Source: Eutreptiella sp. 'Long Island Sound 2002' (taxonomy: Eukaryota > Protista > Euglenida). From it: a stretch of 64,000 bases of DNA. The position numbers were made by a program, and so were the translations under genes. Where the stretch lies: the NCBI GenBank assembly GCA_964036045.1, contig OZ038379.1, positions 2,976,001 through 3,040,000 of the forward strand, given 5' to 3'. Shown here piece by piece: positions 34,148 through 52,839 of the stretch (within the stretch, counting starts at the first letter, position 1; the number at the start of each line of letters is the position of its first letter). Below the pieces are notes generated by a model. It saw only the letters and a list, made by a program, of their open reading frames with translations, was not told where the DNA came from and made no database searches.

Positions 34148-36025
34148 CTACTCCTTGGGCCCGGACCCCGCTCTCGCCCGCCCCCCTCCCGCCGACTTCC
34201 CCGTGTACTTCGCGTGCAGGCTCGAGAAGAACGACGACATGGCCATCACGGAGCCGGCCTCGGGCTCCAGGAGGCGCTTCTCCTCCTCCGTTTTCCGGTG
34301 CAGCGACGAGCTGAGCAGCTCGTTGACGTACTGCAGGTTGGCGCTGTCCACCTTCGCCTGCGCCAGCGAATGGTAGCAGCCGTCCAGCTCCGCCTGCAGC
34401 CGCGCCTCCGCCGCGTCCCGCTCCTTCTGCGCCCGGTGGCTGTCCTTGAGGCACGCGTGCTCGTACGACAGGAACGCCCCGCGGAGCGTCGTGAGCTGCA
34501 GCTGCGTCTCCTGCGCGTGCGACGCGACCTCCCCCTTCAGCCGCGCCGCGTCCTCCCGCAGGGCCGCCGCGTGCGCCCGCAGCCGGCGGCCCATCGTGTG
34601 CAGGTGCTGCGTCGCCAGAGCCTGCGTGTGCGTGACGGTGCGCTCCAGCTGCAGCATCGACCGCGTGAAGGCCTTCTCCAGCGCCGTCCCCTCGGTGCTG
34701 CCGTCCTGCTCCAGCTCCTGCAGGTGCGCCAGGCGCTGCTCCAGCCAGCTGACCACCCCCGCGCACTCCTGCTCCAGCAGCTTCCCGAAGAACACGTCCA
34801 CGCACCCCGTCGTCCGCTGGTGCCGCCGCCCCGCGAGGTCCGTCCGCCACTTCCCCTGCCACTCCTTCAGGTTCTTGGTGTGCGCCGCCAGCACCGCCGC
34901 GAGCTGCGCGCGGGCCCCCTCGTCCGCGGCCCGCGCCCGGGTCTTGGCCTGCAGCGCCTGCCGGAGCCGCTGGGCCTCGTCCTTCCAGTGCTGGACCTCC
35001 CCCTGCAGCCGCACGCTCTGGCTCCCCTCCCCCGTCTGCAGCTGCGCCCGCACCGCGTACAGCTCCGCCCGCAGGCGCTCGGCCTCGGCCCGCAGCTCAT
35101 GGCACTCCTCCTCCTTCGCCGCGACCTCCGCCTGCAGCGCGCGGTGCGCCGCCGCCGCCGCCGGCTCCTCCGCGCACGCGGCCTCCGAGTCCACGGACCC
35201 CTTCCGCCGGTCAAGGTCCTCGGAGGAGGGTGCGCGCGGCCGCGGGGTGTGGGCCGCGTGCTCCGCGCGCAGCGCCTCGACCTGCTCGTCGGCGGCGTCC
35301 AGCTTCTGCTTCAGCTCCCGCACGACCCCATCCATCTGTTTGCAGCGGGCGTCGTACGAGGCGATGGTCTCGTCCTTCACTGCGCCCTGCTGCTCCAGCA
35401 GCCCGTAGGACTCCAGCATGCGGCCGTGCTCCCGCTTCAGCTGGTGCAGCTCCAGGTTGGCTCCGGCAAGCTCCTGCTCGAGGCGTTTGGTGTCCTCCGC
35501 CGCAGCCGAGCGCTCCGCCTTCTCCTGCTGCAGCTGGTGGACGTTCTCGAGCAACTGCTGCCCATACTCGACGGCCTTGACCACGTCCCCTGATCTCTCC
35601 GCCACCTCCGCAGTGAGCTCCTCGATTCGGTCCACGGCGCTCTGCAGGCACTCGGACCAAGGGGCTGGCACATCAGCCTTTGCGTTCAAGAGTGCTCGTG
35701 CCCTTTCCAGAACCATATTGCATACAGTGTGCCACACCTGACCAGGCGAGGCTCCTGCCAAGAAACAGAGAAGGTCGCGTAGTTCAGCGGTCATGCACGT
35801 GACGCCTGAACTAGAGGTGCTCGGTTCAAATCCTGGGGGGGTCGGAACGCAGTGTCCTAGGCGCTAGGGAGTCTGTGACCCCGCGAGCCGGAAGGGATGC
35901 TGCGAGGGACAGGTAGGGATCATGGATATGCTGGAGTTCGGAGAGCGCCCGAGCACTTTACCTTTACCTTTACCTGCCAAGAAACAAGAAATGTGCGCCT
36001 GCGAAGTGGAGGCAACCCTCGACAT
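34148..36025 (-). CDS. Coiled-coil protein, 552 aa, two exons (36025-35974, 35754-34148)
   Basis: 1.6-kb GC3-rich ORF rich in E/Q/L/A/R heptads. It extends in phase 1 across a 219-nt GT-AG intron to ATG 36025 (MSRVASTSQAHISCFLAG|ASPGQ...). A TTTCTTAG acceptor lies 25 nt upstream of the ATG. The start codon is inferred; Met in NMVLER is an alternative. Confidence 0.8.
35773..35973 (+). mobile_element. tRNA-derived SINE with target-site duplication, forming the intron of the coiled-coil gene
   Basis: Starts at tRNA position 1 (GGTCGCG-TA). A box TAGTTCAGCGG 35780-35790, B box GGTTCAAATCC 35823-35833, 3' stem-loop GTTCGG/CCGAGC 35936-35954, (CTTTAC)3 tail 35956-35973. Flanked by direct repeat CCTGCCAAGAAACA (35754-35767 and 35973-35986), extendable by AGAA with a 1-nt indel. 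Confidence 0.88.
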
Positions 36026-39000
36026 TTCGTCTCCGGCTACACCGATTGCTCTAAGAAATGTGTTTCCGTGACAACAAGGTCTCAGCGGCGATGAGTCTAG
36101 TCACTGATGGAAGGCAAGGAAACCTGAACTTCTCTCCTGCCAACAAAGGTGCGTTCAGCGACACCAACCGAAAAGGAGGCAACGAAGGAAGAGGTGGCCA
36201 AGGCAGAATCACTACGTACCTCCACTACGGCCGGTTGATAGATCTGCCTACGGCGAACCATGGCCTCACATTACCGTCGCCGAGACTAAAGGCCAAAACT
36301 ACGTCCGCCGCCGCATCACGGACATACCGGTCATGCCTGCCCGTTCACGTGCAGCGAATTCGGTGTCTACCTCAGAAAAGAATCCCAACACGCTAGCGCT
36401 CTCGGAATTCCTCAACGAGAGCACAACGAACGCCGAAGAATTTTCCAGGGCCACGCCGACCATGACGTCGCCAGAGAGACGCGCCCATGAGCCTGCTCTG
36501 ACTTACTAAGAACTCAAAAAAACACCCACACACAACTACTGTCCCTGACCTCAACTGTGAAAACACCAAGCCACAGCTACAACTACACTCAGGCCTGCAC
36601 ACAGACTCTGTCCGCCCCAATGCTCAGCGTTACTGCTATTCCTGCTAACCCCGCCTGCACCCGGAGATGCCGCCTTAAGGATGGCAGTCCACAGGTAATG
36701 ACCTCCCCATGATTGGCATTGCATTGAGAGGTAAAGACTGAAAGTGCCCATGGCGGGGGCATCCAGTCCATCATGAGAGACCAGGCACTTGTTCTTCATC
36801 TTTTCTCTCTCTTTTTTTTAGGTTTGCCCTTAGGGCCCTGGGCAGCAGCCCAAAACAACTTCACAGCCTGCCAACCGCCGTCGGTTATGCACGGGACGCC
36901 GTGTGGTGCACAGGGCTCCTTTTAACAACTCAGCACCACTGGAGATGGGGGGTGGGGGGGGGGGGGTCCCACACCACCACCACCCCCAGTCCCCCCCCCC
37001 CCAAAAAGCCCCCCCCCCAAAAAAAGCCCTGGTGGTGCACTGCATTTGGGTGGTGGCGGCAGAGGACGAGCAAGAGTAGGATGAGTAAGAGGCGAAGACA
37101 TGGTGACTGCGAAATGAACTGATGTGAAATGACCACCCTGTGCACCAGTACTCCTGAGCCGATCGAGATGTGTACACAGGGGCTCTCGGTGCACACACTT
37201 GGAGTCATCATAGAGCCACTCGTATGGGGCCCGGGATCCATTGCAACTCCGGGTGGGGGGCCATTCAAGCCTATTTCCCACATCCCCCCCCCCCCTCTTA
37301 TTGGGCTCTCAGGGCTGGGCCCACCAAATGACCTCACACACGAATTCCAAGAATCATACCTCAAATGCACACTGCCACCCCCCTTTTAGAGAAGGGTGCT
37401 GTATCCACCAGTTCAAACCAGCTACCCCCTAGTCGTGCGACGGGGCTGCCCCTTTTCGATGCACCCTGACCAAAAATGTTCTCGAAGGCTTCCTCATGGT
37501 TGCGGGAGGCTTTTGGCCGCAGGTTGCTACCGAGGCCATAAGCAAGCCACAAAGTGTGCCACACATGCGGGTCTTGATATGCATATGCAACAATGTTCGC
37601 CATTGATGTCACAGAGGCCGTCGTTCTAGGATGCTGAAGCAACAGTAGCAGCCAAAGCCATAGCCGCAGTCACACCAACAGGAACAGTTACACCCACATG
37701 AACAGCACCAGCATCGGCAACAGTCACAGAAACAATCAGCGATAGCAACAGCATGGACCTGTCCAATGTGCAGCTCACGAGAAAATCCTCTGAGTGGCTG
37801 CGTTGCTGCCTGCCTGCTGCCTGCCTGTCTTCAGCACCTGCCTCAATGCCCTCCTCCCAGGAGACAAGATCTACAATCTTGTTGCCGTTCACGGATAGTA
37901 ACCTGGTGCATTACAGCATGGGTCAACACGGCAACCCCCAACTCAATCCAGCCCGACCCAATCTAACCCAACCCACCTCAACCCCAAGCTGCCCAACCCA
38001 ACTCAACCCAATCCATCCCAACCCAGCCCAGCCCAGCACACGCAGCATATCGGCCCAATTGGTGGAGAGAAATATTGTACCCCCTCTCCCCCTTGTCCAA
38101 GCACAACTGAAATCAGGGGAAATCAGTCAAAACAGGAATGCCATACTTGAACAAGGCCGTGCTGACAAGCAATGAACAGACGGGTGGTTCTGAGGAGTGT
38201 TGGGCCCCGTTACAGCAAGTCTAACCGTCCCATCAACACAAACAGGAAGTCTCAAGCAGAAGGTTGTTACGAGCAGCAGCAACTTTTTGTCCCTGTGACC
38301 CAGCCCCACTTCCCACTCCAAAACCTGCTCACAAACAAGCTTCTTGATAAAAAACCTGCGGGCAGCAACTCAGCAGCCAGACAGAGTTGCTGTGGGCTTC
38401 AACAAGGCCCTGCTAGCCGAAAGGGGTTATGACGTAGTGATGGTGGGGGTGGTGCTAGTGCTGGGGTGGTGGTGAAAATGGCTGCCCCAACCTGTGAGGC
38501 AAACGGCGTGAAGCATTTCATGTTTCGAATCAGCACATTGGCAGGCTCAGGAGAACAGGTCTTTACGCGCCACCTGCCATCCCTAAGGGAAACACTTTAC
38601 GGCGTGCAGCTTTGTGGAACACAACCCAACATCACAGAGACCAACCCCAACCATACCAAGGCCAGGCACCATGCTGGGAGAGCACAAACTCATAGCAAGT
38701 TCCTTAGGCTACACACCGCAGAAGCTCAGGAATCCAACATACCAGAGATTGAATCAGACAACATCAAACGGGCTGCCTTTTTCTACAAATAGTCAGGTTT
38801 CTGACGATGACAGAAACACAGTGACCCAAAAGGTTGGAATAAGGCACCCAAGCCTCCAGTCTTCCGCTTATGACCGTTAAAGAAAACTTTATTGCAACCA
38901 AAAACGGTTTTGAAATTTACAAAACTTTCGAAGCCTTAGACCGTTCTCCTCAGGTATCATAGAAAATAGGTAACGGCCTGTGCAGGCTTTATGCAGTGTT

Positions 39001-43132: not shown

Positions 43133-52839
<9,707 letters not shown>

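What the first reader, a model, noticed from the sequence alone, without database searches (positions are those of the whole stretch)
35754..35986. A SINE insertion that is exactly a spliceosomal intron (candidate retroposon 'introner')
Seen: a 201-bp tRNA-headed SINE (35773-35973) sits antisense in the coiled-coil gene between direct repeats CCTGCCAAGAAACA(g)AGAA. On the gene strand the junctions read TTTCTTGGCAG|GTAAAGGTAAAG (GT from the reversed CTTTAC tail) and CTTCTCTGTTTCTTGGCAG|GAGCC (pyrimidines and AG from the duplicated target). Removing 35973-35755 (219 nt) deletes the SINE plus exactly one TSD copy and fuses ATG 36025 in frame (phase 1) to the 1.6-kb ORF. Unspliced, this frame hits a TAG inside the SINE. 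Established: the well-known intron-generating elements (introners) are mainly DNA transposons that co-opt a splice site from their TSD; precise intron gain from a non-LTR retroposon is rarely documented. Inference: this is a recent intron gain by a SINE in an otherwise intronless gene.
Basis: partly seen in the sequence, partly recalled or inferred. Interest (0 to 1): 0.92.

Follow-up and report, generated by a model that had tools for sequence, protein, structure and literature searches.

The report
Young SINE beside a Euglena gene start
A recently inserted short retroposon sits backwards just upstream of a Euglena coiled-coil gene with intron-like ends, but it most likely lies in the leader that spliced-leader trans-splicing discards rather than being a new coding intron; another copy, inside a kinesin gene, is the better candidate for a retroposon-made intron.

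Summary
The sequence facts hold, with corrections. The genome is euglenid: the Euglena spliced leader occurs 5,458 times. The element is a roughly 206-bp SINE (window 35768-35973, about 700 or more copies). It lies antisense to a coiled-coil gene between perfect 13-bp target-site duplications (TSDs). On the gene strand the junctions read CAG|GTAAAG ... CAG|G.

The "in-frame fusion" is automatic: removing an insertion plus one TSD copy always restores the old sequence. The AG geometry is not rare either. In 14 of 77 sampled copies the TSD starts with CT.

The claim of a coding, phase-1 intron is not supported.
- An Entosiphon orthologue's first Met aligns exactly with ATG 35716, 38 nt downstream of the SINE.
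- The 30-codon "upstream exon" lacks the gene's codon-position GC pattern.
- The E. gracilis conventional donor consensus is GTGTG, not GTAAAG.

My best reading (0.45) is that the SINE landed on a pyrimidine-tract/CAG acceptor in the outron or 5' leader and is discarded by trans-splicing. No RNA data could be reached, so cis-splicing (about 0.27) remains open.

A second copy (L066) has the same antisense AG|GTAAAG...AG| geometry. It interrupts a single-copy kinesin-3 coding exon that is otherwise intact. That copy is the stronger candidate for a SINE-derived intron.

The scan also noted this same stretch as s1-203145.

The parts
35768..35973 (+). SINE copy, about 206 bp: 5' leader GAGAA (35768-35772), head with box-A-like and box-B-like motifs, body, and a (CTTTAC)3 tail (35956-35973). 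It is antisense to the gene.
   Evidence: 718 or more family members. The window copy differs from the majority sequence at 7 of 191 positions.
35755..35767 (+). TSD copy next to the SINE 5' end (CTGCCAAGAAACA). On the gene strand it reads TGTTTCTTGGCAG and ends in the candidate acceptor CAG 35757-35755.
   Evidence: perfect 13/13 match to 35974-35986.
35974..35986 (+). TSD copy next to the SINE tail. On the gene strand it is followed directly by GTAAAG (GT at 35973-35972), the candidate donor.
34148..35716 (-). Coiled-coil gene ORF (522 aa plus stop) with a CC1-box-like AVEYGQQLLE motif. The likely start codon is ATG 35716-35714.
   Evidence: GC at the third codon position (GC3) is 0.94. An Entosiphon orthologue was found at E 5e-6, and its Met1 aligns with this ATG. 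The gene is single-copy in the genome.
35717..35754 (-). 38-nt stretch between the acceptor CAG and the start codon, a probable 5' UTR. It contains a second acceptor-like CAG (35740-35738) followed by GTGTG.
   Evidence: The motif consensus comes from PMC11170887.
35987..36025 (-). It shows no coding periodicity and is probably outron or leader. Further acceptor-like sites lie at CAG 36001-35999 and AG 36053-36052.
   Evidence: In the reconstructed empty site the frame is open back to TGA 36103-36101.
35864..35866 (-). In-frame TAG inside the SINE, met if the ATG 36025 frame is read without splicing.
35792..35794 (-). ATG inside the antisense SINE, in frame with the ORF. It is the start of the mechanical 548-aa ORF and could give a 26-residue N-terminal extension if the SINE stayed in the mRNA.

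Best explanation
The genome is Euglena gracilis or a very close relative. A young member of a family of roughly 700-1,500 short non-LTR retroposons was inserted by target-primed reverse transcription. The element has a GAGAA leader, a head with pol-III-box-like motifs and a (CTTTAC)n tail. It lies antisense, 38 nt upstream of the real start codon (ATG 35716) of a euglenid-conserved coiled-coil gene.

The target was a pyrimidine tract followed by CAG (TTTCTTGTTTCTTGGCAG|G). This is most likely the gene's spliced-leader trans-splice acceptor, or the acceptor of a pre-existing leader intron. The 13-bp TSD duplicated that acceptor. The copy next to the gene is preceded by the SINE's own TTCTC, which lengthens the pyrimidine tract, and it should still work. 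The SINE would then be thrown away with the outron, the mature mRNA would be unchanged, and the insertion would be close to neutral.

The 'perfect intron' look follows from the element's anatomy. The reverse-complemented tail begins with GT. The bottom-strand primer end ...AG pairs with the CU of the CUUUAC tail, so both TSD copies end in AG.

Shown: the element, its TSD, the family, the organism and the position of the start codon by orthology. Inferred: which acceptor is used, and that the SINE is removed with the outron.
For: Organism:
- The Euglena SL occurs 5,458 times against 0 in the control. The dinoflagellate SL occurs 0 times.
- The two SL loci examined are SL-RNA genes with the published GTATA donor (PMC11170887).

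Start codon:
- Both Entosiphon isoforms begin at a Met aligned to ATG 35716.
- The ORF has GC3 of 0.94, while the upstream 30 codons lack its periodicity.

Acceptor:
- E. gracilis outrons end in a pyrimidine tract plus CAG (PMC11170887).
- The site at 35755-35772 reads CCTTCTCTGTTTCTTGGCAG|G.

The family habitually sits in spliced-out sequence next to acceptors:
- L077 lies 38 nt upstream of an internal dynein AAA_8 exon (E 3.7e-36).
- The L088 TSD spans CGCAG|GTGGAG, and the L002 TSD is CCTCCCCCTCAG|TA.
- TSDs are pyrimidine-rich on the SINE's sense strand: 0.64-0.72 against a background of 0.51.

The geometry is not special: TSDs start with CT in 14 of 77 copies. The insertion is present in both DNA samples examined.
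Against: - No transcript evidence of any kind was available. The SL junction is inferred from sequence alone.
- Other acceptor-like sites lie upstream of the SINE: CAG 36001-35999, with a C-rich tract closer to the Euglena consensus, and AG 36053-36052. If one of these is the native SL site, the SINE lies inside the mRNA leader and must be either cis-spliced or retained.
- The first 30 codons of the ORF itself have GC3 of only 0.63, so the composition argument against the upstream exon is weak on its own.
- The acceptor tract here is T-rich, whereas the E. gracilis consensus is C-rich.
- Copy L066 suggests that the same antisense geometry may be spliced as a true intron.
Confidence: 0.45

Rival explanations
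1. The SINE plus one TSD copy (35755-35973) is removed as a conventional GT-AG cis-intron. Either it lies within an N-terminally extended coding sequence starting at ATG 36025 (about 0.10), or it is a new 5'-UTR intron downstream of an SL acceptor at 35999 or 36052 (about 0.17).
For: - The junctions CAG|GTAAAG and a pyrimidine tract plus CAG|G are present, and their use restores the pre-insertion sequence.
- The frame from ATG 36025 is open.
- Acceptor-like sites exist upstream of the SINE.
- Copy L066 has the same antisense AG|GTAAAG...AG|G geometry inside a single-copy kinesin-3 coding exon. That exon is open for at least 742 plus 224 codons and collinear with a homologue across the junction.
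- From my own recall (Conrad, Liou & Blumenthal 1993), placing a donor in a C. elegans outron converts trans-splicing to cis-splicing.
Against: - The orthologue's start and the lack of coding periodicity argue against coding use of ATG 36025.
- The E. gracilis GT-AG donor consensus is GTGTG, with all five bases pairing to U1. GTAAAG matches only GT (PMC11170887).
- Frame restoration is automatic and the AG geometry has a chance rate of about 9%.
- There are no RNA data.
Confidence: 0.27
2. The SINE stays in the mature mRNA leader, or the allele is impaired. Trans-splicing happens upstream of the SINE. The 206-nt antisense SINE adds a short upstream ORF (ATG near 35925, ending at TAG 35866-35864) and an in-frame ATG at 35794. 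Translation is then reduced, or the protein gains 26 N-terminal residues. The insertion is a mildly deleterious, recent event tolerated in a possibly polyploid, asexual line.
For: - The mechanical 548-aa ORF starts at ATG 35794 inside the SINE and is open into the gene.
- The donor is poor by the Euglena consensus (PMC11170887).
- The insertion is young.
- A C-rich acceptor-like site lies at 36001-35999.
Against: - A strong pyrimidine tract plus CAG lies directly between the SINE and the start codon and would be expected to capture the SL.
- The insertion is present in both samples, and no empty allele appeared among the joints shown.
Confidence: 0.18
3. The insertion is excised as a Euglena nonconventional intron. 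The motif fits: N3-CAG at the 5' end (tgg-CAG, 35979-35974) and CTG-N5/6 at the 3' end (CTG 35768-35766, with C from the SINE leader and TG from the TSD).
For: The genetically defined code 5'-N3CDG...CH'GN5-6|R (PMC12501133) is matched in the CAG/CTG spacing (and the sequence). A short AAGGT:ACCTT pairing is possible next to the motifs.
Against: - With the N5 spacer the exon would start with T, not a purine. With N6 the product loses 1 nt.
- End-to-end pairing energy is -14.6 kcal/mol against -12.5 +/- 3.3 for shuffles, and 26% of shuffles are as good.
- For copy L066 the same code would remove 20 extra nt and break the frame (my arithmetic).
Confidence: 0.05

Closest known systems
Introners: transposable elements that create spliceosomal introns on insertion. 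Examples are Micromonas and Aureococcus DNA-transposon introners and the non-LTR-derived introner families reported in Amoebophrya.
   Same: A multicopy element in which one splice site comes from the element end (GT from the reversed tail) and the other from the TSD (AG). Splicing would remove the element plus exactly one TSD copy.
   Different: - Splicing is not shown here.
- Only 1 of 77 sampled copies lies in coding sequence.
- The donor GTAAAG departs from the host consensus GTGTG.
- Only about 18% of insertions get the AG, and only in antisense orientation.
- The element is a SINE-type retroposon. Non-LTR retrotransposon-derived families are about 5% of classified introner families (PMC12130899), and no Euglena case appears in that paper.
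tRNA-derived SINEs mobilised by a partner LINE through target-primed reverse transcription
   Same: About 200 bp and non-coding, with internal box-A-like and box-B-like motifs, a simple-repeat 3' tail, variable TSDs of 10-25 bp (median 16), and microhomology between the target and the tail.
   Different: - No tRNA fold is recognised by ARAGORN or Rfam.
- The tail is (CTTTAC)n rather than poly(A).
- A constant [G/A]AGAA leader is present.
- The partner LINE was not identified.
Outron of SL trans-spliced genes in Euglena, nematodes and kinetoplastids
   Same: A pyrimidine tract plus CAG sits a short distance (38 nt) upstream of the start codon, and everything upstream is discarded.
   Different: The SL junction is not shown for this gene. 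The tract is T-rich, whereas E. gracilis outrons are typically C-rich (PMC11170887).
Euglena nonconventional introns, thought to derive from MITE-like elements
   Same: Direct repeats at both borders. The CAG (+4 to +6) and CTG (-8 to -6) motifs are present.
   Different: No significant pairing of the ends. The exon-start purine rule is not met at the N5 spacing. The element is a retroposon without terminal inverted repeats.

Membership tests
Introner (intron-generating transposable element) | Multicopy family of near-identical elements | tested here: met
   718 or more copies, with median divergence of 3.1% from the majority sequence.
Introner (intron-generating transposable element) | Element plus TSD supplies both splice sites, so that excision restores the host sequence | tested here: met
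   AG|GTAAAG...AG|G in the window copy and in L066. This is sequence geometry only.
Introner (intron-generating transposable element) | Copies are removed from transcripts (junction reads) | not testable with these tools
   the only runs that hold the locus are DNA, and the small RNA-labelled runs do not cover it.
Introner (intron-generating transposable element) | Many copies coincide with introns inside genes | tested here: inconclusive
   1 of 77 copies lies in coding sequence (L066), and 5-6 lie in sense orientation just upstream of exons, in what are probably existing introns or outrons (internal-exon status shown only for L077).
tRNA-derived SINE | tRNA-related 5' head | tested here: not met
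   no tRNA call by ARAGORN or Rfam. Only box-A-like and box-B-like motifs are seen in the sequence.
tRNA-derived SINE | Short non-coding retroposon with a simple-repeat tail and variable TSDs | tested here: met
   (CTTTAC)2-4 tail. A TSD of 10 nt or more was found in 68 of 77 copies (median 16).
tRNA-derived SINE | Partner LINE sharing the 3' end | not tested
   No search was made. Earlier scan notes mention LINE/SINE pairs elsewhere in this genome.
Euglena conventional GT-AG intron | GT...AG borders | tested here: met
Euglena conventional GT-AG intron | Donor consensus GTGTG that pairs with U1 | tested here: not met
   The donor is GTAAAG. The consensus is from PMC11170887.
Euglena conventional GT-AG intron | C-rich pyrimidine tract plus CAG at the 3' end | tested here: inconclusive
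   The CAG and a 15-of-17 pyrimidine tract are present, but the tract is T-rich.
Euglena nonconventional intron | 5'-N3-CDG ... CH'G-N5-6|R | tested here: inconclusive
   The CAG and CTG spacing fits. The exon starts with T at N5 and G at N6 (PMC12501133).
Euglena nonconventional intron | Base-pairing of the intron ends next to CAG/CTG | tested here: not met
   -14.6 kcal/mol, no better than 26% of shuffles.
Outron / SL acceptor | Pyrimidine tract plus CAG shortly upstream of the start codon | tested here: met
   CAG 35757-35755 lies 38 nt before ATG 35716.
Outron / SL acceptor | SL-to-exon junction in cDNA | not testable with these tools
   No RNA data.

The most novel reading that the evidence does not exclude
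This SINE family is a retroposon 'introner' in Euglena. Antisense copies whose TSD begins with CT carry a ready-made AG|GTAAAG...Py-AG| cassette and are removed as GT-AG introns.

The test case is not the window copy but L066 (G000:C7:78016387-78016609). There the SINE splits a single-copy kinesin-3 exon that is otherwise open for about 950 codons and collinear with a homologue. The window copy would then also be cis-spliceable whenever transcription or an SL site lies upstream of it.
Probability: 0.33. Interest if true: 0.75.

Novelty: new member of a known kind. Interest (0 to 1): 0.5.

Why it matters
On my best reading, the window copy is an ordinary, nearly neutral retroposon insertion in discarded leader sequence. 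It shows how intron-like geometry can arise as a by-product of insertion.

If the novel reading is true, Euglena would offer a datable intron gain from a SINE. Most Euglena introns carry flanking direct repeats of unknown origin (PMC12501133), and the lineage runs conventional splicing, nonconventional splicing and trans-splicing side by side. That would give a direct experimental handle on how retroposons seed introns, and on how weak a donor the euglenid spliceosome accepts.

Two PCRs would settle it.

Tried and rejected
- RNA evidence. Depth is even, about 10-30, over both genic and intergenic sequence. Three tiny RNA-labelled runs do not cover the locus. These runs show only that both samples carry the filled site.
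- Exact-protein look-up of the 522-aa product from ATG 35716, hoping for a transcript contig: not on record. The 548-aa ORF is on record only from a 518-kb contig that is 99.97% identical to the window, so it is not independent.
- Homology. Only one true relative of the coiled-coil protein was found, from Entosiphon. Pfam gives nothing meaningful. There is no paralogue or empty-site allele in the assembly.
- tRNA head: ARAGORN and Rfam are negative.
- Nonconventional-intron pairing: not above chance.
- Vertebrate origin, my first guess from genome size and chromosome sizes: rejected by the SL counts. Dinoflagellate origin: rejected.
- Neutral-decay test on L066. P(ORF intact) is 0.08 at 2% divergence and 0.27 at 1%, and lower if the 742-codon upstream frame is counted. 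However, every variant in that SINE copy is shared with at least one other copy, so its age may be near zero. The test is weak.
I did not try to read flanks by any other route.
- The supplement of PMC11170887 holds no donor-sequence table.
Full report
**What is there**

On the gene (-) strand the sequence runs ATG(36025)...CACATTTCTTGTTTCTTGGCAG | GTAAAGGTAAAGGTAAAG...CGCGACCTTCTC | TGTTTCTTGGCAG | GAGCCTCG...ATG(35716)... and then an open frame down to 34148.

The inserted piece is a member of a dispersed repeat family.
- A whole-genome search with it returned 40 scored copies at 96-100% identity, out of 1,464 first-look candidates.
- A 28-mer from its 3' end occurs 718 times with up to 2 mismatches, against 0 for the reversed control.

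I aligned 77 non-redundant copies with their flanks.
- 64 of 77 have AGAA immediately before GGTCGCG. The element therefore begins at window 35768 (GAGAA) and is about 206 bp.
- The tail is (CTTTAC)2-4.
- TSDs of 10-25 bp (median 16) were recognisable in 68 of 77 copies.
- In the window the TSD is the perfect 13-mer CTGCCAAGAAACA (35755-35767 and 35974-35986).
- Neither ARAGORN nor the Rfam tRNA model recognises a tRNA in the head. 'tRNA-headed' rests only on box-A-like and box-B-like motifs.

**Organism**

The genome is 2.28 Gb with chromosome-sized contigs.
The dinoflagellate SL occurs 0 times.
- Two SL loci that I read are SL-RNA genes, with the SL followed by GTATA. This is the donor reported for E. 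gracilis SL-RNA (PMC11170887).
- The only protein relative of the ORF comes from the euglenid Entosiphon sulcatum.

The relevant splicing rules are therefore those of Euglena. There are three routes.
- SL trans-splicing.
- Conventional GT-AG introns, with donor consensus GTGTG and a C-rich pyrimidine tract plus CAG. Outrons end the same way (PMC11170887).
- Nonconventional introns, with the code N3-CAG...CTG-N5-6|R (PMC12501133).

**The gene**

The ORF from ATG 35716 to 34148 has GC at codon positions 1/2/3 of 0.76/0.45/0.94, a strong coding signature. It is single-copy. It carries an AVEYGQQLLE motif that resembles the CC1 box of dynein adaptors; that comparison is my own recall and was not tested.

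Both Entosiphon isoforms start with a Met that aligns to the Met at 35716, and the AVE[Y/F]GQ motif sits at residues 48-53 in both proteins. The 30 codons between ATG 36025 and ATG 35716 (empty-site reconstruction) have GC 0.47/0.60/0.60.

This composition argument is weak by itself, because the first 30 real codons also have GC3 of only 0.63. Together with the orthologue it puts the start at 35716 with roughly 75% confidence. The SINE then lies 38 nt upstream of the coding sequence, not in it.

The next gene upstream on the same strand is an arginyl-tRNA synthetase. Its DALR exon ends near 43136.

**Why the intron-like look is not itself evidence**

First, removing an insertion plus one TSD copy always recreates the pre-insertion sequence, so the in-frame fusion is automatic.

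Second, the GT comes from the reversed tail in every antisense copy. The AG at both junctions appears whenever the TSD begins with CT.
- The first two bases after the tail are CC in 47, CT in 14 and something else in 16 of the 77 copies.
- This fits priming by a nicked bottom strand whose 3' end pairs with the CUUUAC tail (my inference).
- About 18% of insertions, or about 9% once orientation is counted, therefore have this exact geometry by mechanism alone.

Third, GTAAAG is a good donor in animals and yeast, but it matches the E. gracilis consensus GTGTG only at GT.

**What most likely happens**

The duplicated target, TTTCTTGTTTCTTGGCAG|G, is itself a pyrimidine tract plus CAG, 38 nt before the start codon. 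That is the anatomy of an SL acceptor.

Independent support comes from where other copies sit.
- TSDs are pyrimidine-rich on the SINE's sense strand (0.64-0.72 against a background of 0.51).
- Five sense-oriented copies lie 0-63 nt upstream of high-GC3 open frames.
- These include L077, 38 nt before an internal dynein AAA_8 exon (E 3.7e-36), and L088 and L002, whose TSDs span CGCAG|GTGGAG and CCTCCCCCTCAG|TA.
- The family thus often lands in or beside acceptor tracts, in sequence that is spliced away anyway.

Against this reading, other acceptor-like sites lie upstream of the SINE: CAG 36001-35999, with a C-rich tract, and AG 36053-36052. If retained, there would be a short upstream ORF and an in-frame ATG at 35794.

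A nonconventional excision is formally possible, since the CAG and CTG motifs are correctly spaced. However, the end pairing is no better than shuffles, and the exon-start rule fails at N5. I give this 0.05.

**No transcript test was possible**

The single run search found three DNA data sets from one study and three tiny RNA-labelled runs without coverage. The laid contigs show even depth over genic and intergenic DNA and enter the SINE from both flanks in both samples. The filled site is therefore real and shared. None of the 15 joints shown corresponds to an empty allele; 16 further joints were not shown.

**A better candidate found on the way**

The 77 copies were screened for open, high-GC3 frames that become continuous after removing the SINE plus one TSD copy. 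Besides the window copy and a marginal sense-oriented hit at L088, which lies at an intron-exon boundary, only L066 (C7) stood out.
- The SINE lies antisense at L066:1189-1411 (223 nt).
- Its junctions read CTGAAG|GTAAAG...CTTCTCTTCAGGTGTTCCTGAAG|GCC.
- The frame is open for 396 codons upstream within the locus, and 742 in the genome. It is open for 224 codons downstream, with GC3 of 0.98 and 0.94.
- The upstream part carries the end of a kinesin motor and an FHA domain, which indicates a kinesin-3.
- A 55%-identical homologue from a metagenome (P0005, a single ORF) aligns across the junction without any gap...FQLLGDCQVFLK|ALAYMVDC... against ...FQLVGECDVWLR SLANMIEH....
- No second close copy of this gene exists in the assembly.
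- The nonconventional code would remove 20 extra nt there, so only GT-AG splicing could rescue the gene.

It is not proven that the gene is rescued. A neutral-decay simulation gives P(ORF intact) of 0.08 at 2% divergence and 0.27 at 1%. The SINE's variants are all shared with other copies, so the insertion may be very recent or hemizygous. I put about one chance in three on this family making real introns.

**Comparison with what is known**

Introners derived from non-LTR retrotransposons are documented, at about 5% of classified families, for example in Amoebophrya (PMC12130899). That survey does not mention euglenids or SINEs. In Euglena, most introns carry flanking direct repeats, and a MITE origin has been proposed for the nonconventional ones (PMC12501133, PMC11282704).

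The window feature is best filed as a new member of a known kind: a SINE-type retroposon insertion in an outron or leader. A testable possibility that it is a new variant of introner is attached mainly to L066.

Noticed in passing
L066:1189-1411 (G000:C7:78016387-78016609): The same SINE, antisense, splits a single-copy kinesin-3 coding exon. The TSD is CAGGT[A/G]TTCCTGAAG and the junctions read AG|GTAAAG...AG|G. The frame is open on both sides and collinear with homologue P0005. This is a stronger candidate SINE-derived intron than the window copy.
   Followed up: yes
L077:about 1039-1240 with the exon from 1279; L088 TSD at 1235-1251; L002: Sense-oriented SINE copies lie 0-63 nt upstream of high-GC3 open frames. 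Only L077 is shown to be an internal exon, a dynein heavy-chain AAA_8 exon. The L088 TSD duplicates a 3' splice site (CGCAG|GTGGAG) and the L002 TSD is CCTCCCCCTCAG|TA. The family seems to prefer C/T-rich acceptor tracts.
   Followed up: partly
G000 genome-wide; L031 and L032 (about 1500-1640, - strand): There are 5,458 dispersed matches to the 24-nt SL. The two loci read are SL-RNA genes (SL followed by GTATATACTCGCTCC...). That is an unusually large and scattered SL-RNA gene family.
   Followed up: partly
L012-L025 (C22, C23, C26, about 10-21 Mb) and C1:178041669-178046707: 14 sampled SINE copies share identical (CCCTG)n-like flanks, so they were multiplied by segmental or satellite amplification rather than by retroposition. 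Four 28-mer hits on C1 are spaced about 1,670 bp apart in a tandem array. The one unit fetched (L036) gave no full-length SINE match.
   Followed up: no
window 35733-35740 (- strand): CAG|GTGTG: a second acceptor-like CAG follows a C-rich tract (GCCTCGCCTGGTCAG) and is immediately followed by the exact Euglena donor consensus GTGTG, 17 nt before the start codon.
   Followed up: no
window 36053-36062 and 35985-35994 (- strand): The 10-mer CACATTTCTT occurs twice in the leader, each time heading an acceptor-like site (..CTTAG and ..CTTGTTTCTTGGCAG).
   Followed up: no
window 43136-43582, 46625-47995 and 51088-51558 (- strand): Exons of an arginyl-tRNA synthetase (tRNA-synt_1d and DALR_1 domains) lie upstream on the same strand. 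About 7.4 kb of repeat-rich spacer separates this gene from the coiled-coil gene.
   Followed up: partly
window 34148-34250 (- strand): The Entosiphon orthologue continues about 160 residues beyond the region that aligns to the end of the Euglena ORF (...SSFFSSLHAKYTGKS). The Euglena gene may therefore have a further downstream exon, and 'intronless' is not established. No match to that tail was found in the window by tblastn.
   Followed up: partly
window 36743-38121: Contig depth in all three DNA runs rises 10- to 200-fold here, indicating other high-copy repeats just upstream of the gene.
   Followed up: no
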